From Haliotis rubra (Eukaryota), in contig NW_025766814.1 in the NCBI RefSeq assembly GCF_003918875.1, forward strand, positions 1,178,001 to 1,242,000: 64,000 nucleotides of DNA, written 5' to 3'. A program made the position numbers and the translations under genes. The notes beneath the pieces were generated by a model, which had not been told where the DNA came from, searched no databases, and saw only the letters and a list, made by a program, of their open reading frames with translations. Positions 1 to 56,735 of this stretch are shown piece after piece (the first letter of the stretch is position 1; every line of letters begins with the position of its first letter).

Positions 1-434
1 CTCATGATCTAGTCTAGATTGTAAAACTGGCTGCTTTTAGTAAGGATTTACTATGGATGTGGATAGGGTTTTGTTGCTTCTATTACTGTGTTCTCAGTGG
101 CTGTCTGACCCATAATAAACACTAAACAAGCTTAACCTTCTTGCGAACACCTGGTGTTTCAGTGATCCACCATATTATACGTCTGTTTTGCTTTACATCC
201 AATGGAACCTGTTTTGGTTTTAACCAGCTGTTCCCTAGTATATTACATATATTTATATTTCAAAATAGCTCTAAAAATTTTTTCTCCCACTCACTATATC
301 GTGCATGTGCAAACCTTTGAGTTCACAGATGTCACAAATGACAAAAGTACATATTTTGATGATTTCAACACTCAGAAGATATAGTATTACGTAATGGTAT
401 CGACGTAAGGAAAACTTGGAAATGAAATATTCAC

Positions 435-529
435 CAAGAACAACATGTTCTAATAACAACAAGAACAACATGTTCTAATAACAACAAGAACAACATGTTC
501 TAATAACAACAAGAACAACATGTTCTAAT
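435..529. repeat. 25-bp tandem repeat (CAAGAACAACATGTTCTAATAACAA), ~3.8 copies
   Basis: Identical units start at 435, 460, 485 and 510. Confidence 0.95.
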
Positions 530-708
530 CATGTTCAGATAAATCATTCTGTGACCCCATTTGAAGCACATTCCTCGAAACTTAAGTGTATTGGCGTTAA
601 AATGTGCTGACTATAGACAAACATAAAACCTCACAAAACAGTCTCAGTGAAACGCCACAATAATATCCATTAGGTGAAAAAGGCAAAACAGCGGCGAAAA
701 CCACATGA

Positions 709-817
709 CTCTAGGACCTACACCGAAACGTCGCTTTCACTTTAAGAAAGAAGGTGTTCATCCGTATATAGTTATCTTACTTTACCACTCCAACCTCTAA
801 GTGCCTCTAAAAGTAGT
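709..817 (+). mobile_element. 5'-truncated Penelope-like terminal fragment (partial hammerhead half)
   Basis: ...CTACACCGAAACGTCGC...AAGAAAGAAGGTGTTCATCCG...CAACCTCTAAGTGCC resembles the tail of the other PLE-like fragments. Flanked by CACATGA at 702-708 and 818-824 (candidate TSD). The CTGANGA half of the core is missing. Confidence 0.6.
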
Positions 818-3202
818 CACATGAATGAGCTACCGAAGACCAACGATGTCATCTGGTGCTTGCAACATTTATAATCAGATTCCACACACGTGCCTATGTT
901 TCATGCAAAGGTTACGCAGAAATGGTTATTTACAATCCGAAGTATAAAGGACATTTCTTTTTTCTGCAAACCTTCAGTGAAGTCATGCCTATGTTCTCTG
1001 ACCGGTTTATACGCCGTAACGATTGTCCTTAATAAAATACCGGGTTGCACAATCAGAAGCAGTTCCTCACATCATTAACTGCCTTTTCATTTTCTGCTGA
1101 TTGGATTCAAACCCCTTCAAACCAATTGCATATCGGTTATATCTCTGAACTTACTGTCCTCCAGGTGGTGAAACTTTATGAATATGGGAAGCTATTTTGA
1201 AGTCATACTTTGACGTGATAATTATGACCAGTGCGCGATAAATTACTTATCATGACATCAATATCGCACCACCGCACATTTCCTTCTACATGTTTATCTT
1301 TTCAGAGCAATACTTCAGAACGTGTTGCTGTCACGAGAACGTTGGTTTGCACGTGTAAATTTCACAAGTCAAGTCTGTCAAGGGGGAAACAGCTCAACTC
1401 TGCACCGGGGCAATTTATATAGTAAAGGCTAGGTTTATAAGTTAAATAAAACAGAGTTACATTTATCCCTTGGGGTGTTATGAGATTTATAGATTTATCG
1501 CAGGGGGAAACCTCGGGGACTAACCCCTTCGTTTTTATCCCTCATATACACGTTTTGAATAAAAAATACATAGAGAGAACTTTGACGTGCGATTTACACT
1601 TCACAAAGCTGCCCTTCTCTGTGTGTTTTTTGTTGTATACACAAACGTGATGGATGCCATATAATCCGTATGCCTACAAAATAAGTTTACAATTTGTACG
1701 ATTACAGTAAGTATTGTATTTTAGAGTATTGCAACTGATCTGAATAATTATCGGTATAGTTTCACATTCGTATAACACACACCACTATCATTACAAAATC
1801 CTGGCTCGGATCAGTTCCGGCATAAAATGTATACACATTGCTCATCCTATAAAATTTCATCCCAATATTTCATTCCTGTCTCACATCTACTTTCAATAAG
1901 CCAGAGAACATTCATCAATATTGTCAACAGATGAAACACTCCTACAGAACAAGGAGAAGGAACTTTATTTCATCACATCACCAAACCTATACCTTACCCC
2001 TGCCTTATTGTGCTACATTTCTCTCCGAATCAAGTATTGCAGTCTCAACGATTCCGACCCTTGGTACCCTAAACTTCAGATGTAAAGTAATCACAACCCT
2101 CTCGTCTTGAAGGACGAGCGGGCGACAGGTAATATATGATTACATTCATCCTCTCAAGGAAACACATGGCCTGGACGGACGACTTCTGGGTAACACTCAG
2201 GGCGGGAAATTACAAGGGCCAGCTTGATAAATATTTGATTTAATAAGCTAATAGGGGAGAGTATCTGTCTGGTCATCCGCCTTGACACAAAGGCCAAGAA
2301 GGAGGAGAGCCAAGACTGAAGACATTACGGAGTGGTGCGCATCTTTTACTGCATCCTGGACCATTCAAGGCAGAGACAGTAGTCCGACTGGCCTACAACT
2401 CTGGATATTAGTCCCACTTACTTCTTCCAAATTGCATCTGCGCTTATTAGATATCTTGTCACAATTTGATATAGTTTGCGTGTTGTAAGCAATTGTTCCT
2501 TGCCTTGGCAGCTTAAATGCAGCAGCTCTTGTCGACATTCGAACTCCAGGAGGTTAAATTGCTTGATTGGACCAGGCCCGAAAACTCCTCACATTCGCAT
2601 CTCCCAAGAATCTCACAGAAGTCAGTAATTTTCTGTATGACCCATGAGAAATGTCTCTATTTGAGAAATTGAAATGGATTGAGCAGGTGACCCCAGAAAA
2701 GTCTCAGCTCAGGCGGACATGGCTTTCGTAATTGCCGAGATGGTTCCACGAATAGCCGGCTATTACGAATGGGCCGGAACATAAGAAAACATGTCACGCT
2801 ATGTTTTGTAGGACTGATGAATTTCATGCAAACGCCACGGGCTCGTCTTACAACTTGGATTTTATGATGTATCTGGGATTTAAAAGTACAGAAAAGTTAG
2901 TTGGGAATTGGCGACATAAAAAGTTTGATGTTTGGGATTGGAACTTGAAAATGCATAAAAATATATGGACTTGGAAAATTACGTTGATATATCTCTGCGA
3001 TGATCACTTCATATTCACAAACATCCTCAGCTACTGAATGAAGATTCGTTAGTGATACTTACTAGATAAAGGTTCGCTATTGTGTGGTATCTGTAGTCTC
3101 ATTGGTATTGACACTTTTCAGTGATACAGCAGTAGGTGAGACCCGTTAGAAAGACAAATCTTCAATTGTTTGTATAATATCAATATACCACTTAACGTTA
3201 TA

Positions 3203-8065: not shown

Positions 8066-8250
8066 CCAATATACTTTATGGATTTAAGCGTCTGTATTCT
8101 TTCCCACACGTTTCGGGATCATTACAGATCCCTTCATCAGGTGAAGTGATCTGTAATGATCCCGAAACGTTCTGTGGGGAAAGAAAAAGAAGCTTAAATC
8201 CATAAAATATCTTGGTCATCCATAACAACTTCTAAATGCCGCTAAAATGT
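8066..8250. mobile_element. Penelope-like mini-insertion: divergent inverted pair of terminal segments with hammerhead motifs
   Basis: Arms ~8066-8138 and ~8142-8215 are inverted repeats. Minus strand reads CAC-CTGATGA-A-GGGATC-TGTAAT-GATCCC-GAAA-CGT-GTG. 12-bp TSD AACTCAAATGTA at 8054-8065 and 8251-8262. Confidence 0.8.
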
Positions 8251-10840: not shown

Positions 10841-11407
10841 AACATAACCATTATACATTAAGCATCACGACTTCAATTATTTGATCTAAGAACTTTGTAT
10901 ATGTTGTATATCAAATAAAGACACATATAAAACAAGCATGTTTACTGTCTGAAAAGCCCCGCAGAACATTGAACGCCTTCTTCTTGCATGAATTTCCAAA
11001 GCCCTACATTAATACTGGTTCTAGTTCAGAAATGTTAGAATGGTTCATGAGGTGCATTCTTAATACGATAACATTATCCCCGTCAATGGACCTGTTTGCA
11101 CTAGATATTCATTTTCAGATCATTGGAGAGTATACAAGTTGAGCTGATTTGTCAGGATCTCTAAGGTTAACGGATACAATACTACCTCATCCTCACAGGT
11201 CCAAGTGTATCGCTGGATGAACAAAAGAATAAAGTCACTTGTCTAAAGAGACACCATATGTCTCAATTTGTATCAAATTTCAAACGTACCATGACCATGT
11301 CATTAAACGATATAACACAGTGACGTGATGCTTTGAGATAACGGTACAACTACGTTATAATATAAAAGGTGAGAATTTGTGGATGTCAACTATTTTCCTG
11401 TGAGGAA

Positions 11408-11447
11408 CACGACGTTTCGGAGTATGTTCTTACTCCTTCATCAGGTG
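11408..11447 (-). ncRNA. Minimal type I hammerhead ribozyme motif (PLE-type)
   Basis: Minus strand: CAC CUGAUGA A GGAGUA AGAACA UACUCC GAAA C GUC GUG. Intact core, 6-bp stem II, CAC/GUG stem I, palindromic ACGU in place of stem III, GUC cleavage triplet. Confidence 0.8.
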
Positions 11448-11477
11448 AATACATTGGTTGGCTTAGGTAATTCACCT

Positions 11478-11519
11478 TCACCTGACGAAGGAGTAAGGAA
11501 ATACTCCGAAACGTTGTGA
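11478..11519 (+). ncRNA. Minimal type I hammerhead ribozyme motif (PLE-type)
   Basis: UCAC CUGACGA A GGAGUA AGGAAA UACUCC GAAA C GUU GUGA. Intact core, GUU triplet. Confidence 0.75.
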
Positions 11520-11564
11520 TCCTAATAATAAAGAAGTTGACATGTATATATCCTCTCGTGTTTT

Positions 11565-13760: not shown

Positions 13761-14280
13761 AACAGATTGTAGAACTTCCTTTGACCAGTCAGCCAATACC
13801 CAACAGTTGTAGAACTCCCTTTGACCAGTCAGCCAATACCCAACAGATGTAGAACTCCCTTTGACCAGTCAGCCAATACCCAACAGATGTAGAACTTCCT
13901 TTGACCAGTCAGCCAATACCCAACAGATGTAGAACTTCCTTTGACCAGTCAGCCAATACCCAACAGATGTAGAGCTTCATTTGACCAGTCAGCCAATTCC
14001 CAACAGATGTAGAACTCCTTTTGACCAGTCAGCCAATACCCAACAGATGTAGAACTCCTTTTGACCAGTCAGCCAATACCCAACAGATGTAGAACTCCCT
14101 TTGACCAGTCAGCCAATACCCAACAGATGTAGAACTCCCTTTGACAAGTCAGCCAATACCCAACAGATGTAGAACTCCCTTTGACCAGTCAGCCAATACC
14201 CAACCGATGTAGAACTTCCTTTGACCAGTCAGCCAAAATCCAACAGATATAGAACTTCCTTTGGCCTGTCAGAAATAGTT
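13761..14280. repeat. 40-bp minisatellite (CAACAGATGTAGAACTCCCTTTGACCAGTCAGCCAATACC), ~12-13 copies
   Basis: Exact 40-bp periodicity. Diverged monomers extend to about 13550 and 15230. Confidence 0.95.
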
Positions 14281-14439
14281 CAACGGATGTAGCACTTTCT
14301 TTTGAGTGGGTACTTTGTGGAAGCAAAACATTTTTGACCAGTAAGCCGATATTTTCACAGATACAACACTTTCTTTAACCAGTAAGCCAATACTCAGCAG
14401 ATGTAGCATTGTTTTGCCATGTCAGCAAGAACTTCAATA

Positions 14440-14995
14440 GCACATGTCAGTAGATGCAATAGTCTCTTTTATCTGTGAGCCAATACATCCTCAGATGAAT
14501 CACTTTCTGTGAATAGTTATTGAAATGTCCTATCACCATATGCAATGCTTTCTATTCCCAGTCAGCACATGTCAGTAGATGCAAGAGTTTCTTTTATCTG
14601 TGAGCCAGTACATCCTCAGACGAATCACTTTCTGTGAATAGTTATTGAAATGTCCTATCACCATATGCAATGCTTTCTATTCCCAGTCAGCACATGTCAG
14701 TAGATGCAAGAGTTTCTTTTATCTGTGAGCCAGTACATCCTCAGATGAATCACTTTCTGTAAATAGTTATTGAAATGTCCTATCACCATATGCAATGCTT
14801 TCTATTCCCAGTGAGCACATGTCAATAGATGCAAGAGTCTCTTTTATCTGTGAGCCAATACAGCCTCAGATGAATCACTTTCTGTAAATAGTTATTGAAA
14901 TGTCCTATCACCAAATGCAATGCTTTCTATTCCCAGTCAGCACATGTCAGTAGATGCAAGAGTTTCTTTTATCTGTGAGCCAGTACATCCTCAGA
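14440..14995. repeat. 125-bp tandem repeat (~4.4 copies), trimeric higher-order derivative of the 40-mer
   Basis: CACATGTCA starts at 14441, 14566, 14691, 14816 and 14941. Each unit contains three diverged ~41-bp subunits. Confidence 0.92.
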
Positions 14996-15682
14996 GGCAC
15001 CACTTTCTATGACTAATGATTCAGTACCCCTGCCACCATATCCAATACCTTCTATGCCCAGAAAGCAAATACTTTAGATACGACACCATCTTTAATAAGT
15101 CCACAATACTTCAACAGATACAACACTTTCTTGGACAAGTTAGCCACATTGACCAGATGCAACATTGTCTTTAAAAGGCACATACGACTGTAACCGATAC
15201 AATATCCTGTTTGATCAGTCATCCAGTAGGGTTATCCAAAAACGAGATGCTTCACATTTTCGGGTTAGGCATAGATTTATTGAATTAGAAAGCATTAATA
15301 ATTACAACATTTAAATTATTCACAGAGGTCAACAAAACATCATTAACACAAGGGCTACTGGGACATTTTCCCACAATACATGAACGTGAACATGAATAAT
15401 TTAAATATTATTGAAGCAATAATATAATTACATCTGACAAAATATTAAAACTGTCTTATTCTTATCTTTCTGTAGTTGACTATAGTATTTGTATGCACAG
15501 TGCGGCTCATGTCCTCAATCATTATTGGCAGTAATTCTAATATTATATGGCAATAGAGTCCAAATGGCAAAGAACAGAAATCGCGTTTAACGTCATTATT
15601 GTTTACTGTGAAGAATTCGTGGATCAAGTGTTCTCAGCGTTGTTTACCAATGGATGTTGTATAAGTGAGTGCTTTAAAATTA

Positions 15683-24049: not shown

Positions 24050-24662
24050 GATGAGGCGGTAAATAACATCAAACTATTCACTTTCTCGTTGGTAGTCGGG
24101 TACGAGGCGGTCAATATCTTCAAATGTTCACTTTCGCCTCGGTTGGCGGATATGGGGCGGTAAATAACGTCAAAATATTCACCTTCTAGTTGGTAGTCGG
24201 GTACGAGGCATTCCATATCATCAAACTTTTCACTTTCTTGTTCGTAGTCGGGTACAAGGCGGTCAATAACATCAACACTATTCACTTTCTCGTCGGTAGT
24301 CGGGTACGATGCATTCCATATCATCAAACTTTTCACTTTCTTGTTCGTAGTCGGGTACAAGGCGGTCAATAACATCAACACTATTCACTTTCTCGTCGGT
24401 AGTCGGGTACGATGCATTCCATATCATCAAACTTTTCACTTTCTTGTTCGTAGTCGGGTACAAGGCGGTCAATAACATCAAACTATTCACCTTCTGGTTA
24501 ATAGTCGGGTACGAGGCTGTCAATAACATGAAACTATTCACGTTCTCGTCGGTAGAGAGGTACGAGGCGGAAATAACATGAAACTATTCACTTTCTCGTT
24601 GGTAGTCGGGTACGAGGCGGTAATAACATCAAACTTTTCACTTTCTCGTTGGTAGTCGGGTA
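24050..24662. repeat. ~51-bp minisatellite (GGTAGTCGGGTACGAGGCGGTCAATAACATCAAACTATTCACTTTCTCGTT), ~12 copies, with internal 103-bp dimer
   Basis: The GTAGTCGGG motif recurs about every 51 bp. Alternating A/B variants occur at 24243/24346/24449 and 24295/24398. Confidence 0.93.
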
Positions 24663-25787: not shown

Positions 25788-26154
25788 ATTTGTTTTAGTG
25801 GCATTCTAGAAGTTGGTGGTATAGGGATGACAAGACTTTATGGATGATCAACTTCTTTATTTATTTATAAGATAAAGAGATAACAATAACAAGGGTGGAA
25901 AAAAAAGCATAAAGTAAGTTACATGATGAGCTCCAATAATCATAGCACATCATAGTTATTGTAGCTCATCATATAACTTACTTTATGCTTTGTTTTTCCA
26001 CCCTTGTTATTGTGTTCTCTTTATCTTATCTTGTATATAAACTGGTGTACACCTTCATTCCCCCATATGCTTGAAAACGGTATAAGAATCTATACCAAAA
26101 CGTCGCCATTGTCAAAATGTAGAAGTTGATCATCCATAAAGTCTTGTCATCCCT
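25788..26154. mobile_element. Penelope-like inverted-pair insertion with variant hammerhead
   Basis: Long fold-back centred at ~25945. The right arm carries GC-TTGAAAA-C-GGTATA-AGAATC-TATACC-AAAA-CGTC-GC (26069-26106). 12-bp TSD ATTGGAATGGTG at 25776-25787 and 26155-26166. Confidence 0.8.
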
Positions 26155-41722: not shown

Positions 41723-43164
41723 TTCCATTGAGACATGTAGTTTACCTTTATAACAATGTTTGCAAATTATGTAAGTCATCTTACATGTAGAAGTAAGTCG
41801 TAATTCGTGATCCATTATAATATGGTTGTTGTTGCCAAGGTGTCCAAATGAAGTCTTGGGTCACATGGATGTTGTGTGTGGGACACTGAACTCACCGTCT
41901 CAATTTCATCTTCATTTTCATGGACTGTATCATGATTTCGCGGTCCATGTATTTACGGGCTGTGGAGGCATGGCTTGATTGTGGAAGAATGTGGGATCGA
42001 ATAAACTCTCGTTGCAATGGTAACACCCAATATTTGCAAACTATATGTGTATACTCAAGAAACTAAGTAACACGACTAAATACAGTAAACTACAGGTACA
42101 CTCAAAGGGACCACTAATTATAATTCGTTTAACCATAGTTCGTCATACGCATTTCGACTGTAAAAGACAGCAAGATTTTGTATGCATGTGTATACCTCTA
42201 TGTCTGTTGTTTTTTAAGCGTGATTGGTGTATTATATACTCACAAAAACAAATGATCTGTTAACAAAAAACATCAACAAACATCCCCCCCCCTCCAAAAT
42301 AAATAAATAAATAAAATAACGTACATGTTATCATGATACGGAACAAACTCAAGCAAGAAAATTATTGTAATGTAGTCATGGAGAATTATTTAACAATTTA
42401 AAAAACGTTCAAAGCATATCGAAAAATGAAGTCAAACAGAACTTTTGGTTGAATCAAGAATGCGGCTTAGCGTGGTTGGCCGAGAAAGGCCGAAGATGGC
42501 CGAGGTCGGGCGAATATCAGCCATGCTGGAGGCAGAGGAGTTTAATAAATTTATACTGGAGTAGATTCTCGCCAGCGTCTAGACTGATTATTGAACGATG
42601 AAATTTCCAGTTTGTTTTTAGGGACGTGTCAACATTCTGTGCAAGAAAATTATATTACTTGGGAAAATAAATAGTTGTCCTCATCAGACCCATTTTCAAT
42701 ATTCGTGCGTTCACCCTGGTTGATTTTTTCTTGCGTGTTCTTGTTCTATCGATTGAACTGATGTATAAGAAAGATACGCACAGTTCATCACAAAAATGTA
42801 TTCTACGGTTTCAAAAATAGCTCTCCCATCGCATGCGGGAATTAGAAACCTTTCATTATTTTATTGGAGTAACCAGATTCCGTCGGAGTGCAGTCAAACA
42901 AGTTGTAGTGCAGACCAAATGCCATGGTGCATGCAAACATTTTACAGCACACACCCAAACACACATGATCGCGACGTCTTTTCATCTCCTTCTTATTTCC
43001 TACATGGTGAAAGTCAATAAGTCAAGGTACCGTATTTCCTCTGACGGGATATCTGAAACCTTGTTTTATTATAGAACGGCGTATACTACACAACAATTCA
43101 CAGGGATTTGAAAGTGTCCCTGTAGGAGGGTTTATGTCGTATTTCTAGTTCCTTTGGATGTTGC

Positions 43165-43255
43165 AGCCTGGTTCCCTGGGTCTGTTGCGCCTGCGCTAAC
43201 GATCCAACACTGACGGAGCGTTAGCGCAGGCGCAACAGACCCAGGGAACCAGGCT
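43165..43255. mobile_element. 91-bp GC-rich fold-back mini-element (MITE-like)
   Basis: Perfect ~37-bp inverted arms AGCCTGGTTCCCTGGGTCTGTTGCGCCTGCGCTAACG / CGTTAGCGCAGGCGCAACAGACCCAGGGAACCAGGCT. Confidence 0.8.
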
Positions 43256-43321
43256 GCTAATGTTGAAGTGTAGATATTTTTTGCTGTAAATATGAAAGTG
43301 TCAAGTTGAAATGAGCGTAAA

Positions 43322-53129: not shown

Positions 53130-54935
53130 GAGTAGGCTGTCACGCTGTATTTAAAGGAGATGTAGGCTGTCACGCTGTGTTAAACTGAAGGGTAGGCTGT
53201 CTGACTGTATTAAAAGGAGGTGTAGGCTGTCACGCTGTGTTAAACTGAAGGGTAGGCTGTCTGACTGTATTAAACTGAGGGGCAGATTGTCATACTGTAT
53301 TAAACTGAGGTGCAGGCTGTCATACTGTATTAATCTGAGGGGGAAGACTATCACGCTGTATTAAACTGAGGTGTAGGCTATGACACTATTAAACTGAGGT
53401 GTAGGCTATCATACTGTATTAAATAGAGGCGTAGGCTATCACACTGTATTAAACTGAGGTGTAGACTATCACGCTGTATTAAACTGAAGTGTAGGCTATC
53501 ACGCTGTATTAAACTGAGGCGTAGGCTATCACACTGTATTAAACTGAGGTGTAGACTATCACGCTGTATTAAACTGAAGTGTAGGCTATCACGCTGTATT
53601 AAACTGAGGCGTAGGCTATCACGCTGTATTAAACTGAGGCGTAGGCTATCACACTGTATTAAACTGAGGCGTAGGCTATCACGCTGTATTAAACTGAGGC
53701 GTAGGCTATCACACTGTATTAAACTGAGGTGTAGACTATCACGCTGTATTAAACTGAGGTGTAGGCTATCACGCTGTATTGAACTGAGGTGTAGGCTATC
53801 ACACTGTATTAAACTGAGGTGTAGGCTATCACACTGTATTAAACTGAGGTGTAGGCTATCACACTATTAAACTGAGGTGTAGGCTATCACACTGTATTAA
53901 ACAGGTGTAGGCTATCACACTGTATTAAACTGAGGTGTAGGCTATCACGCTGTATTAAACTGAGGCGTAGGCTATCACACTGTATTAAACTGAGGTGTAG
54001 ACAAACACGCTGTATTAAACTGAGGTGTAGGCTATCACGCTGTATTCAACTGTGGTGTAGGCTATCACGCTGTATTAAACTGAGGTGTAGGCTATCATAC
54101 TGTATTAAACTGAGGTGTAGGCTATCACACTGTATTAAACTGAGGTGTAGGCTATCATACTGTATTAAACTGAGGTGTAGGCTATCACGCTGTATTAAAC
54201 TGAGGCGTAGGCTATCACACTGTATTAAACTGAGGGGTAGACTATCACGCTGTATTAAACTGAGGTGTAGGCTATCATACTGTATTAAACTGAGGTGTAG
54301 GCTATCACGCTGTATTAAACTGAGGTGTAGGCTATCACACTATATTAAGCTGAGGCGTAGGCTATCACACTGTATTAAACTGAGGTGTAGGCTATCACAC
54401 TGTATTAAACTGAGGTGTAGGCTATCACACTGTATTAAACTGAGGTGTAGGCTATCACACTGTATTAAACTGAGGTGTAGGCTATCATACTGTATTAAAC
54501 TGAGGTGTAGGCTATCACACTGTATTAAACTGAGGTGTAGGCTATCACACTGTATTAAACTGAGGTGTAGGCTATCACACTGTATTAAACTGAGGTGTAG
54601 GCTATCATACTGTATTAAACTGAGGTGTAGGCTATCACACTGTATTAAACTGAGGTGTAGGCTATCACGCTGTATTAAACTGAGGTGTAGGCTATCACAC
54701 TGTATTAAACTGAGGTGTAGGCTATCACACTGTATTAAACTGAGGTGTAGGCTATCATACTGTATTAAACTGAGGTGTAGGCTATCACACTGTATTAAAC
54801 TGAGGTGTAGGCTATCACACTGTATTAAACTGAGGTGTAGGCTATCACACTGTATTAAACTGAGGTGTAGGCTATCACACTGTATTAAACTGTGGTGTAG
54901 GCTATCACACTGTATTAAACTGAGGTGTAGGCTAT
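53130..54935. repeat. 30-bp satellite (TGTATTAAACTGAGGTGTAGGCTATCACAC), ~60 copies
   Basis: Strict 30-bp periodicity; homogeneity increases toward the right. Confidence 0.97.
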
Positions 54936-56610
54936 ATAGAGATTACTAAACGAGCGTCTGTCAGATACCATTTATCTTACAACGAGTTGTTTCAAAACGT
55001 ATTTGACGAGCGAAAGCGAGTTAAATACGTTTCGAAACAACGAGTTGTAAGATAATTGGTATCTGACAGACACGAGTACAGTAATCTGTATCTTACACAC
55101 CATAAAATTGCACCATTTTATGGTCGAATAGATTCAAATTTCATATTTTCTCATCGTAGCTTCTCAATAATACACAACACAACGTTTATGGATGAGTGAC
55201 GTCACCTGGCTTCCTAATCACTACCAATCCCCATGGTGACCCTCCACAAAAAAGTTTCTGCCACCTCTTCGCAACATCAAGGCAATAGTGATAATGAAAA
55301 CTACATAACATCACAGAAAATTAATTAAACACTCTAAAACGATGATGTTACCGTGCAAATGTGGATGATTTTCATTCTTGCAAGCAAAAAATATTTGAGC
55401 GTGTGACGTCATCGTTATCGCTTGGTGGTTGTCGTCATCGGAAGATTGTTTCGGATATCTCTGCACATTGGGGATCTGTACTTGTGTACCAGTTTCTGTT
55501 CAATGTTCTCCCATAGACCGGAGCCAAAACTATTGAGTGTGTGTAATTAGGTGCACCCAATGTGCTTGAATGTGACATTGCTGAGGTTACGTTCACTGTC
55601 AATGGGGACTACTCTTCTTCGCCACATCCTTCTCGTTTTCCCGAGCCAGAAACTGCCACTTGGAATGTAACGGAATTTACGGAGTTGTCAGTATGAAATG
55701 TGAGTTGATTACATCCTGTATGTTATCAAGACATAAACTTTGCATTATCATGCGTCGGAGGAATATCTTGAGCAATGACTTATGTGTAGATCAACCGTTC
55801 CTGTACATGTTCGATTGAATAGAAAGGACGTGTGCCGCCATTTGCACTCATGAAGCCTAGCAAAACGTTCCATGTTGATACATTGTTTCAACGAGTGTGT
55901 TTTGGTTCTGATTGTCATGAGTGAATTTGATAACATTGGAATCACATAGTAGCTCGAAGTTGGAAGTGTGTCTTCATCATACTGTATCAGTGAAACATGT
56001 CATCTTCATCAATGCATCAAAGAAACAACGAGGCAAATCGATCTCACAATGGACAGGCACTGGCGTTATCGTGTCAGGTATTTTGCAAGACGATACATGA
56101 CACTTGTCGCATCTCTCCAGTAAAAGTACCAATGTTGTACATTTTGAATATTCGAAGGGAATCCCGGTCTTAATTTCTAACGGCGATTTTCACATAATTG
56201 TTTACACAGGTATCACTGATTGTTCGAGCCATTTTGAATTCATGACTGGAAATCTAAAGTGTTAATAAAAGGAATTAGAAAATAAATAGATTCGTGTTAT
56301 ATTTATTCTAATTGTGTTTCATTGTATACATACCTGTTTATGTTACAGGGGCGGTGGGGTAGCCTGTTTATGTTACAATCGTGTACAAAAATAACAGGTA
56401 GGTGTAAAGGGTTTATGTTACAATCGTGAAAATTTGTGCACGAGTAACAGGTTTCTGTTCGATTGAAGCCCAAGTAACTTATCAATGAATTTTAATCAGG
56501 AAAGCAGTCATCACCATGGAGTAGCAAATCACGAGATTAGAAATCGATCTCACACATATGAGTGATACCAGTTTTCTCACATGGGTTTCTCACCCACGGG
56601 TGTGTAAGAA
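54936..56610. mobile_element. Non-autonomous DNA element with terminal hairpin, asymmetric inverted repeats and no TSD (Crypton- or Helitron2-like)
   Basis: Splits one satellite monomer exactly (GGCTAT|CACGCTG). Hairpin at 54940-55087. TCTTACACACC at 55091-55101 is the inverse of GGTGTGTAAGA at 56599-56609. Confidence 0.8.
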
Positions 56611-56735
56611 CACGCTGTATTAAAATGAGGTGTAGGCTATCACGCTGTATTAAACTGAGGTGTAGGCTATCACACTGTATTAAACTGAGGTGTAGGCTAT
56701 CACACTGTATTAAACTGAGGGGAGGACTGTCATAC
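56611..56735. repeat. Remainder of the 30-bp satellite (~4 copies)
   Basis: Resumes in register after the insertion. Confidence 0.95.

What the first reader, a model, noticed from the sequence alone, without database searches (positions are those of the whole stretch)
54936..56610. Element without a TSD whose terminal hairpin appears built to fold as single-stranded DNA (tandem G.A pairs + GCGAAAGC mini-hairpin)
Seen: the insertion splits a satellite monomer cleanly, so the empty site is known and shows no duplication. The left end is a ~148-nt fold-back (54940-55087). Several of its 'mismatches' are the same motif: CGAG faces CGAG in three places (ACGAGC/ACGAGT, AACGAGTT/AACGAGTT, and C-GA-GC..GC-GA-G), and the apex is GCGAAAGC. 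An 11-bp repeat just inside the hairpin has its inverse at the other terminus. Established: 5'-CGAG/CGAG forms tandem sheared G.A pairs, and GCGAAGC/GCGAAAGC are exceptionally stable DNA mini-hairpins. The complementary strand would have T.C mismatches instead, so folding is strand-specific. Inference: the element is mobilised through a folded ssDNA intermediate recognised by a tyrosine recombinase (Crypton-like, analogous to integron attC) or an HUH enzyme (Helitron2-like).
Basis: partly seen in the sequence, partly recalled or inferred. Interest (0 to 1): 0.78.

Follow-up and report, generated by a model that had tools for sequence, protein, structure and literature searches.

The report
Helitron-like transposon with mismatch-marked giant hairpin
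This is one copy of a very abundant, non-coding, Helitron-like (Helentron/Helitron2-type) jumping gene of a mollusc. Its end carries an unusually long hairpin with three conserved G-A mismatch pairs, which could show which DNA strand this class of element folds when it moves.

Summary
Window 54936-56610 is a 1,675-bp non-coding insertion that splits a 30-bp satellite monomer cleanly, with no duplication or deletion. Its left 154 nt form a ~72-bp-stem palindrome. CGAG faces CGAG at three places and the apex is GCGAAAGC.

Three diverged relatives from metagenome contigs show 23 of 67 stem pairs changed on both sides. The three mismatch sites and their flanking C-G pairs stay in place. CGAG occurs 6:0, 6:0, 5:0 and 3:1 on one strand versus the other.

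The layout matches the Helitron2/Helentron (HLE2, HINE) group. A 12-nt repeat sits at one terminus and its inverse lies just inside the terminal hairpin. There is a nearby inverted repeat, no target duplication, AT-rich targets with a T at the junction, and families that share only their termini. When the ends are joined, the repeat lengthens the hairpin by 11-12 bp, so the junction lies inside a stem.

The HUH/Helitron2-like reading is supported by structure; the tyrosine-recombinase reading is not. No RepHel-encoding partner could be reached. "Strand-specific folding" is overstated, because both strands fold. The usual HLE2 polarity would put the G-A version on the strand that does not move.

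The scan met this family before on other DNA of this genome (s1-333075).

The parts
53132..54935 (.). 30-bp satellite array, left of the insertion (host target)
   Evidence: TRF: period 30, 60 copies; ends with ggctat
54936..56610 (-). Whole non-coding element (1,675 bp). The strand given is the inferred canonical HLE2 orientation: terminal repeat first, hairpin last.
   Evidence: Contigs of four organisms diverge at both ends. No ORF over 68 aa and no Pfam hit. The satellite phase is restored across the insertion.
54936..55089 (+). Terminal imperfect palindrome of about 154 nt (stem about 72 bp). It reaches to within 0-2 nt of the element end.
   Evidence: Across four homologues 96.6% of cells are paired and 23 of 67 pairs changed on both sides.
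54951..54954 (+). Outer CGAG, facing CGAG at 55073-55076 (tandem G.A / A.G)
   Evidence: Flanking C-G and G-C pairs are invariant in 4/4. L041 and L020 keep a purine-purine mismatch here.
54983..54986 (+). Middle CGAG (within ACAACGAGTTGT), facing CGAG at 55041-55044
   Evidence: Identical in window, L024 and L041. L020 has T.C plus C-G instead.
55007..55020 (+). Apex module CGAG-C-GAAA-G-CGAG; the mini-hairpin GCGAAAGC is at 55010-55017
   Evidence: Stability of d(GCGAAAGC): PMC13037366. The apex was the search pattern, so its 4/4 conservation is ascertained.
55041..55044 (+). Middle CGAG, right arm
55073..55076 (+). Outer CGAG, right arm
55090..55101 (+). Inner (subterminal) copy of the terminal inverted repeat, TTCTTACACACC in the family majority. 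This copy has A at 55090.
   Evidence: conserved in L024 and L041, diverged in L020
56335..56430 (+). Short internal direct repeats (GTTTATGTTACAATCGTG units). This copy has about 44 nt more than most of the family.
   Evidence: In one search the depth collapses at 56356-56413, and joints 56344->56388/56389 appear in all four runs.
56574..56594 (+). Two short inverted repeats (TTCTCACA and TTCTCACC) complementary to the terminal repeat, as beside the 5' subTIR of DINE-1/HINE
   Evidence: z about -2.9, modest. The same motif is in L041. HINE substructures: PMC7492417.
56599..56610 (+). Terminal inverted repeat GGTGTGTAAGAA, ending at the last base of the element
   Evidence: Contigs diverge directly behind 56610. 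The same 12-mer ends the L041 element, and L024 has one mismatch.
56611..56720 (.). 30-bp satellite array, right of the insertion
   Evidence: resumes with cacgctgtattaaa

Best explanation
The element is a non-autonomous member of the Helitron2/Helentron group of rolling-circle transposons (HLE2; its non-coding forms are called HINE or DINE-1-like).

Read on the window's minus strand, it starts with a 12-nt terminal repeat followed by short inverted repeats. It ends with the inverse copy of that repeat, followed immediately by a terminal stem-loop.

Inferred mechanism:
1. A RepHel (HUH) transposase supplied in trans nicks one strand at the repeat-first end.
2. It peels that strand off 5' to 3'.
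3. It uses the terminal hairpin as the stop and cleavage signal, as shown for the Helraiser hairpin.
4. Pairing of the terminal repeat with its inner copy stacks the two ends next to each other. The joined junction then lies in one continuous stem of about 85 bp.

The hairpin is about ten times longer than usual. It carries three conserved CGAG/CGAG sites and a GAAA apex, all with the same polarity. One strand therefore forms a continuous helix with sheared G.A pairs and a very stable mini-hairpin. The other strand forms the same helix with three pyrimidine-pyrimidine internal loops and a weak loop. I read this as a mark that lets the machinery tell the two strands apart, in the manner of IS608 hairpins or integron attC sites.

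Shown: the anatomy, the conservation, the covariation, the abundance and the lack of a TSD. Inferred: the enzyme, the single-stranded intermediate, and what the mismatches do. Which strand is read remains open. The usual HLE2 polarity puts the G.A version on the strand that is not moved.
For: Clean insertion without TSD. A second complete copy, L024 743..58, also lacks a TSD and lies between T and T in repeat-first orientation.

Layout: a 12-nt repeat at the very terminus, with its inverse directly abutting the hairpin. The same layout is in L024 and L041. [quoted passage not shown] It also matches HINE substructures (PMC4067079; PMC7492417).

Flanks: the first flanking base behind 56610 is A in the consensus of all four runs, which is T|TT in repeat-first orientation, and the flanks are AT-rich.

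Termini versus interior: L041 shares only the two termini with the window copy. In organism B the termini are far deeper than the interior.

Abundance: 1,600-3,100 contig pieces laid per run in four organisms.

Stem under constraint: 23 of 67 pairs with changes on both sides, 0/500 shuffles reaching this, 2-5 in slid controls.

Mismatch sites: they stay mismatched and the CGAG context is kept.

Joined ends: the stem is extended, -64.8 versus -50.5 kcal/mol.

Background: the HUH transposase of Helraiser cuts ssDNA only, and its hairpin acts as a terminator (PMC4778049).
Against: No RepHel-encoding relative with these termini was found or could be searched for. The window holds no RepHel or PIF1 fragment, and the three relatives are non-coding.

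This copy sits between G and A in repeat-first orientation, not between T and T.

The hairpin is far outside the usual size of HLE2 stem-loops, which are 5-10 bp stems.

Comparative support rests on only four sequences, three of them found through the apex motif itself.

The energy model cannot quantify the G.A or mini-hairpin asymmetry.

The conserved ACGAG could instead be a sequence-specific protein site rather than a pairing motif.
Confidence: 0.7

Rival explanations
1. First reader's main picture. The G.A-bearing strand (window plus strand) is the strand that is mobilised as ssDNA, so the hairpin is at the 5' end, as in 'HLE2-reverse' families. The G.A pairs and the GCGAAAGC mini-hairpin stabilise or nucleate the fold. 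They may also act as a priming site for second-strand synthesis, like the single-strand origins of rolling-circle plasmids and the phage G4 origin.
For: All four asymmetric features have the polarity that favours the plus strand. Mini-hairpins of this sequence are known at ssDNA replication origins, and the pyrimidine-loop variants are much weaker (PMC13037366). HLE2-reverse families with a 5' stem-loop upstream of the left repeat exist (PMC11417382; PMC5148889). With RNA parameters, which do score tandem GA and GNRA loops, the GA strand of L024 is 10.7 kcal/mol better.
Against: T|T flanks in L024, a T at the L041 junction, and the four-run consensus fit the canonical polarity, with the repeat-first end as 5'. 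In L041 a copy lacking the hairpin end sits upstream of a full copy in that polarity, like the 3'-truncated inner copies reported for Helitron arrays. Both strands fold.
Confidence: 0.3
2. The family is moved by a different single-strand-DNA enzyme than a Helitron RepHel. Candidates are another HUH or Rep_trans-type initiator, or a Replitron-like Rep. The HLE2-like layout would then be convergent.
For: No RepHel link was shown. The hairpin is atypical for HLE2. An unchecked scan note reports a Rep_trans-type initiator elsewhere in this genome (s1-329445).
Against: All structural hallmarks tested fit HLE2. Replitrons have short direct terminal repeats and were found in plants, algae and protists (PMC10288648); these ends are inverted, not direct.
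Confidence: 0.1
3. The asymmetry serves an RNA, not ssDNA. The plus-strand transcript would fold into a long hairpin with a GNRA tetraloop and tandem G.A pairs, both classic RNA motifs. It could be a small-RNA precursor or a structured regulatory transcript.
For: GCGAAAGC and C-GA-G tandem mismatches are also stable RNA motifs (mentions r(GCGAAAGC); my own knowledge for r(GGCGAGCC)2). RNA fold: -93.6 versus -82.9 kcal/mol.
Against: No Rfam family matches. The hairpin is flush with the element end and with the inner repeat, which points to an end-recognition role. No RNA run held the stretch (0 on record as RNA, DNA-kind search only). A hairpin that feeds silencing would not be kept by selection on the transposon.
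Confidence: 0.07
4. Composite: a fold-back MITE (54936-55089) happens to lie next to a separate TIR-bounded cut-and-paste (DDE) element (55090-56610).
For: The 12-nt inverted repeats alone would delimit 55090-56610.
Against: Hairpin plus inner repeat plus terminal repeat occur as one unit in diverged families. Contigs diverge at 54936, not at 55090. No TSD flanks 55090-56610 or 54936-55089. Both termini have similar depth in each run.
Confidence: 0.04
5. Crypton-like or other tyrosine-recombinase element whose folded end is recognised like an integron attC site.
For: No TSD. A strand-asymmetric imperfect palindrome resembles attC in principle.
Against: No YR ORF here or in relatives. The asymmetric terminal repeat plus terminal stem-loop is the HLE2 signature, not a described Crypton feature.
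Confidence: 0.03

Closest known systems
HINE / DINE-1-like non-autonomous Helentrons (mite, Drosophila, Culex; Cg_HINE of the Pacific oyster)
   Same: Non-coding and very abundant. 11-13-nt subterminal/terminal inverted repeats, a short inverted repeat beside the 5' repeat, a palindrome after the 3' repeat, no TSD, T-rich targets, internal tandem repeats, and families sharing termini only (PMC4067079, PMC7492417).
   Different: The 3' palindrome here has a stem of about 72 bp (154 nt) instead of 5-10 bp, and it reaches the very end of the element. It carries three conserved tandem G.A / C.T mismatch sites and a GCGAAAGC apex. No autonomous Helentron was linked.
Helitron2 / FoHeli elements with asymmetric terminal inverted repeats (Chlamydomonas, Fusarium)
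   Same: One repeat at the terminus and the other 20-50 bp inside the opposite end, with a hairpin between it and the terminus. A circular form with joined ends is reported for FoHeli1 (PMC5148889).
   Different: Those hairpins are short. Some of those families have hairpins at both ends or at the 5' end.
Helraiser (canonical Helitron) 3' hairpin
   Same: A terminal hairpin acts as the transposition terminator. The enzyme cuts ssDNA only, and the loop and loop-closing pair matter (PMC4778049).
   Different: Helraiser has a 19-bp palindrome 11 nt from the end, 5'-TC/CTAG-3' ends, an A-T target and no terminal inverted repeats. None of these is present here.
IS608/IS200-family imperfect palindromes and integron attC sites (own knowledge)
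   Same: Imperfect hairpins whose unpaired or mismatched bases tell the enzyme which strand is the substrate. They work like what is proposed here.
   Different: They are prokaryotic, use different enzymes (Y1 HUH TnpA; the integron integrase) and have much shorter hairpins. No homology is claimed.
d(GCGAAAGC) mini-hairpin at ssDNA phage origins; single-strand origins of rolling-circle plasmids
   Same: Identical apex sequence. These are strand-specific folded ssDNA signals (PMC13037366; plasmid sso from my own knowledge).
   Different: Those are priming sites. No such role is shown here, and under canonical polarity the motif would lie on the strand that is not moved.

Membership tests
HLE2 (Helitron2/Helentron) non-autonomous element (HINE) | Insertion without target site duplication | tested here: met
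   The window copy restores the satellite monomer exactly. L024 copy 743..58 has unrelated flanks.
HLE2 (Helitron2/Helentron) non-autonomous element (HINE) | Short (at least 11 nt) inverted repeats placed asymmetrically: one at or near the 5' terminus, the other subterminal at the 3' end | tested here: met
   11 nt exact, 12 nt in the family majority. Same in L024 and L041.
HLE2 (Helitron2/Helentron) non-autonomous element (HINE) | Stem-loop or palindrome between the 3' repeat and the 3' terminus | tested here: met
   Present and covarying, but about ten times longer than described examples.
HLE2 (Helitron2/Helentron) non-autonomous element (HINE) | Short inverted repeat complementary to the 5' repeat, close to it (DINE-1/Cg_HINE) | tested here: met
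   TTCTCACA and TTCTCACC at 56574-56594. The fold z is about -2.9 only. The same motif is in L041.
HLE2 (Helitron2/Helentron) non-autonomous element (HINE) | Insertion between T and T / T-rich target | tested here: inconclusive
   L024 is T|T. L041 has a 5' flank T. The consensus first flank base corresponds to T in four runs, with AT-rich flanks. This window's copy lies between G and A.
HLE2 (Helitron2/Helentron) non-autonomous element (HINE) | Autonomous partner with the same termini encoding RepHel (with or without endonuclease) | not testable with these tools
   No RepHel or PIF1 fragment in the window or in the relatives. The host genome outside the window cannot be searched.
Canonical Helitron (HLE1) | 5'-TC, 3'-CTRR, short hairpin about 11 nt from the 3' end, A-T target | tested here: not met
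   The ends are AT.../...GAA on the plus strand and TT.../...TAT on the minus strand. The site is T|C.
Cut-and-paste TIR element / fold-back MITE (DDE) | Symmetric terminal inverted repeats flanked by a TSD | tested here: not met
   The repeats are asymmetric and there is no TSD at either candidate boundary.
Crypton / tyrosine-recombinase element | YR-encoding copies sharing the termini | not testable with these tools
   No YR ORF in the element, the window ORFs or the relatives.
Replitron | Short direct repeats at the termini | tested here: not met
   The termini are inverted repeats, not direct ones. Features from PMC10288648.

The most novel reading that the evidence does not exclude
The three conserved CGAG/CGAG sites plus the GCGAAAGC apex form a strand code in a eukaryotic rolling-circle transposon. 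The transposase, or the host priming machinery, reads the shape of the folded end to choose the strand. Pairing of the terminal repeat with its inner copy builds the joining site inside one long stem. This would give the first sequence-level handle on how Helitron2/Helentron elements, never reconstituted experimentally as far as I could find, pick strand and ends. It could also turn out that the mobilising enzyme is not a RepHel at all.
Probability: 0.3. Interest if true: 0.7.

Novelty: new variant of a known kind. Interest (0 to 1): 0.45.

Why it matters
Helitron2/Helentron elements are among the most abundant DNA transposons of invertebrates, and they seed satellite arrays in molluscs. Their transposition has so far only been inferred by analogy with one reconstructed bat Helitron.

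This family offers a natural experiment. Its terminal hairpin is long, its stem evolves freely but stays paired, and three mismatch sites and the loop keep one polarity. Short top- and bottom-strand oligonucleotides and a cloned RepHel from the same genome could show directly which strand is folded, cut and joined. They could also show whether the asymmetric terminal repeat serves to bring the ends together.

If the mismatches turn out to be a plain protein-binding motif, the finding is simply an unusually large end hairpin in an ordinary HINE family.

Tried and rejected
- Other copies in the window: the hairpin, apex and terminal-repeat motifs occur only in this element.
- Coding capacity: there is no ORF over 68 aa and no Pfam hit in the element. 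36 window ORFs gave only a DDE_3 fragment and weak HTH hits, with no RepHel, PIF1 or YR.
- Viral contig scans: two scans for hairpin motifs gave one unrelated hit (L121) and none.
- Metagenome scan for the apex 18-mer: of 120 loci only three are relatives. The rest are unrelated, and many belong to a bacterial-looking repeat.
- Rfam on five loci: nothing.
- Strand test with DNA energies: uninformative, because the parameter set does not score the mini-hairpin.
- Satellite array: no palindromes at its borders, so it does not appear to be carried by another HINE.
- Other long palindromes in the window: unrelated in sequence.
- Literature: full-text searches found no description of tandem G.A mismatches in a transposon hairpin, nor of abalone Helitron termini.
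- Host species: not verified by me. The runs are coded, and earlier scan notes call it an abalone.
- Per-position variation at the G.A sites among the thousands of genomic copies: not readable, because one search lists only the 40 best-supported differences.
Full report
**1. The observation**

The 30-bp satellite occupies 53132-54935 and resumes at 56611-56720. The left part ends in ggctat and the right part starts with cacgctgtattaaa. Together these make an intact monomer of the kind seen many times in the array. The insertion 54936-56610 therefore has a known empty site, no target duplication and no deletion.

The boundaries are confirmed by other copies. Logan contigs of four runs from four coded organisms were laid at 80% likeness or better. 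Contigs stop matching exactly behind 56610 (24, 53, 39 and 83 contigs), and in one run before 54936 (27 contigs).

The left end is a long imperfect palindrome. Its arms, 54936-55007 and 55020-55091, are 85% complementary. The DNA fold is -50.5 kcal/mol, z = -13.7. Pairing the arms base by base shows three places where CGAG faces CGAG, each giving tandem G.A/A.G:
- 54951-54954 with 55073-55076
- 54983-54986 with 55041-55044
- 55007-55010 with 55017-55020

The apex GCGAAAGC is at 55010-55017.

The 11-nt motif just inside the hairpin (55091-55101) has its exact inverse at 56599-56609.

CGAG occurs six times on the plus strand of the 154-nt hairpin and never on the minus strand. The window average is about 1.7 per kb per strand. 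The description is correct and is not a chance pattern.

**2. What the family looks like**

The element has no ORF longer than 68 aa and no Pfam match. It is extremely abundant. Between 1,600 and 3,100 contig pieces per run were laid along its whole length in four organisms.

This copy differs from the family majority at three hairpin positions: 55005 G>A, 55056 T>A and 55090 A>T. The majority letter restores a base pair at the first two. At the third it lengthens the terminal inverted repeat to 12 nt, TTCTTACACACC / GGTGTGTAAGAA. The private changes of this copy are therefore decay. The CGAG mismatches are not.

A metagenome scan for the apex 18-mer returned 120 loci. BLAST against the element showed that three of them are relatives:
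- L024: 86% identity over the hairpin
- L041: 83% over the hairpin, plus 70% over the opposite terminus
- L020: 76% over part of the hairpin

In all three the hairpin is directly followed by the inner repeat. L041 and L024 also end in the terminal repeat. L041 shares nothing with the window copy between the two termini. In organism B the termini are much deeper than the interior. So several families share only these ends, as is usual for non-autonomous Helitron-like elements.

**3.

The four hairpins were aligned (A1) and scored against the hairpin structure, with the mismatch columns left unpaired.
- 96.6% of cells form standard pairs.
- 23 of 67 pairs changed on both sides. None of 500 shuffles reaches this, and slid controls give 2-5.

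The non-Watson-Crick positions stay where they are.
- In L024 the only departures from pairing in the main stem are the three tandem G.A sites, two G.T wobbles and a 2-nt bulge.
- L041 keeps two sites exactly. At the outer site it has A.A plus A.G.
- L020 keeps the apex, has G.A plus A.A at the outer site, and has T.C plus a C-G pair at the middle site.
- The C-G and G-C pairs flanking each tandem mismatch are invariant or nearly so.

CGAG counts on the two strands are 6:0, 6:0, 5:0 and 3:1.

Caveats: there are only four sequences, and the apex was the search pattern, so its conservation is ascertained. The conserved polarity also argues against the arms simply being copied from one another, because that would erase the mismatches.

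**4. What it is**

Read on the minus strand, the element has this order:
1. the terminal 12-nt repeat;
2. two short inverted repeats complementary to it (plus-strand 56574-56594, modest z);
3. a non-coding interior with a variable short tandem repeat (56335-56430; one search shows that most copies lack about 44 nt of it);
4. the inverse copy of the repeat;
5. immediately after that, the terminal palindrome.

This is the published architecture of the Helitron2/Helentron group. [quoted passage not shown] Its non-coding HINE/DINE-1 forms match as well, including those of the Pacific oyster (PMC4067079; PMC7492417).

Target data are partly consistent. The complete L024 copy lies between T and T in an AT-rich site without a TSD. 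The L041 junction has a T. The consensus first flanking base in all four runs corresponds to T. This window's copy, however, lies between G and A.

Other families do not fit.
- Canonical Helitron ends (5'-TC, CTRR-3', A-T target) are absent.
- A composite of a fold-back MITE and a TIR element is disfavoured. The three parts travel together in diverged families and no TSD flanks either part.
- Replitrons have direct terminal repeats (PMC10288648).
- Nothing points to a tyrosine recombinase.

The decisive membership feature could not be tested. That feature is a RepHel-encoding copy with the same termini. The window has no such fragment, the relatives are non-coding, and the rest of the host genome is out of reach.

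**5. How it probably works**

By analogy with Helraiser, the transposase cuts only ssDNA and the 3' hairpin acts as the terminator (PMC4778049). On that basis I infer the following sequence:
1. one strand is nicked at the repeat-first end;
2. it is unwound;
3. it is released at the hairpin end.

I tested an idea noted by the scan on another piece (s1-429516). When the two ends are joined, the terminal repeat pairs with its inner copy and lengthens the hairpin by 11-12 bp.
- Joined form: -64.8 kcal/mol, against -50.5 for the hairpin alone.
- With the three family-majority letters: -72.0 kcal/mol.

The junction then lies inside one continuous stem, 12 bp from its base. In L024 and L041 the hairpin runs flush to the end, so the helix would be continuous or nearly so. 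This gives the asymmetric repeat a plausible job, which is to hold the 5' and 3' ends side by side for joining. That role is inferred, not shown.

**6. The mismatches**

It is established that d(GCGAAAGC) melts at 76.5 C, and that variants with pyrimidine loops are far weaker (GCTTTTGC 33 C) (PMC13037366). From my own knowledge, tandem G.A in a C-GA-G context forms stable sheared pairs in both DNA and RNA.

All four asymmetric features favour the plus strand. The claim that folding is strand-specific is nevertheless too strong. The minus strand is predicted to fold equally well:
- window: -50.0 versus -50.5 kcal/mol
- L024: -54.8 versus -56.9 kcal/mol

That model is blind to the motif, since it gives the mini-hairpin only -0.8 kcal/mol. 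RNA parameters do score tandem GA and GNRA loops, and they give a 10.7 kcal/mol advantage to the GA strand of L024. What differs between the strands is local shape at three sites and the loop. That is enough for a protein to tell them apart, as in IS608 hairpins or attC sites (my own knowledge; an analogy only).

Which strand is read remains open. The T|T flanks point to the canonical polarity. So does the L041 arrangement, where a copy lacking the hairpin end lies upstream of a full copy (compare the 3'-truncated inner copies mentioned). In that polarity the moved strand is the minus strand, which carries C.T/T.C loops. The G.A version would then sit on the other strand.

I give it about 0.3. 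A conserved ACGAG protein-binding site, or an RNA-level fold, are further possibilities.

**7. Novelty**

Full-text searches found no description of a transposon end hairpin with tandem G.A mismatches, nor of abalone Helitron termini.

The scan itself has met this family before on other DNA of the same genome.
- s1-333075 was followed up with the same overall conclusion, and I reached mine from independent tests here.
- s1-339717 and s1-429516 are unchecked first-reader notes.

I did not verify the host species. The runs are coded and the earlier notes call it an abalone.

**Verdict:** a real and abundant non-autonomous Helitron2/Helentron-type element, with an unusually long and conserved mismatch-marked terminal hairpin. 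It is a new variant of a known kind. It is of moderate interest, because it makes strand choice in this group testable.

Noticed in passing
L001-L120 (e.g. L004 4078-4095, L012 3187-3204, L003 50-247): Most metagenome contigs holding the 18-mer AACGAGCGAAAGCGAGTT are unrelated to the mollusc element. About half share a conserved repeat of about 55 nt in which the same CGAG-GC-GAAA-GC-CGAG module is nested in a second G+C-rich stem. These are mostly soil contigs. L003 has three copies 90 nt apart. No Rfam family matches.
   Followed up: partly
window 56344-56413: This copy carries about 44 extra bases of a short internal direct repeat (GTTTATGTTACAATCGTG units). Family contigs of all four runs skip 56344->56388/56389, and the depth collapses at 56356-56413.
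   Followed up: partly
L041 1-253 and 1090-1320: Directly beyond the terminal repeat of the L041 element lies a second, ~97% identical copy of about 230 bp of the element's own interior. A copy lacking hairpin, inner repeat and about 75 nt therefore abuts a full copy head-to-tail.
   Followed up: partly
window 11364-11562, 43163-43257, 25899-25996, 8108-8170: Four other long palindromes (arms 86, 43, 41 and 29 nt). They are unrelated in sequence to the hairpin studied and lack CGAG/CGAG sites. They are probably other fold-back or MITE-like repeats.
   Followed up: no
window, one of the ORFs listed: One ORF fragment matches DDE_3 (Tc1/mariner-type transposase, E = 2e-16) and another matches an HTH_23 domain. 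These indicate a decayed cut-and-paste transposon elsewhere in the window.
   Followed up: no
window 13761-14272, 14439-15012, 24053-24662: Further short satellite-like arrays (periods 40, 125 and 51/103 nt; 95%, 95% and 79-86% matches). I did not examine whether they are carried by mobile elements.
   Followed up: no
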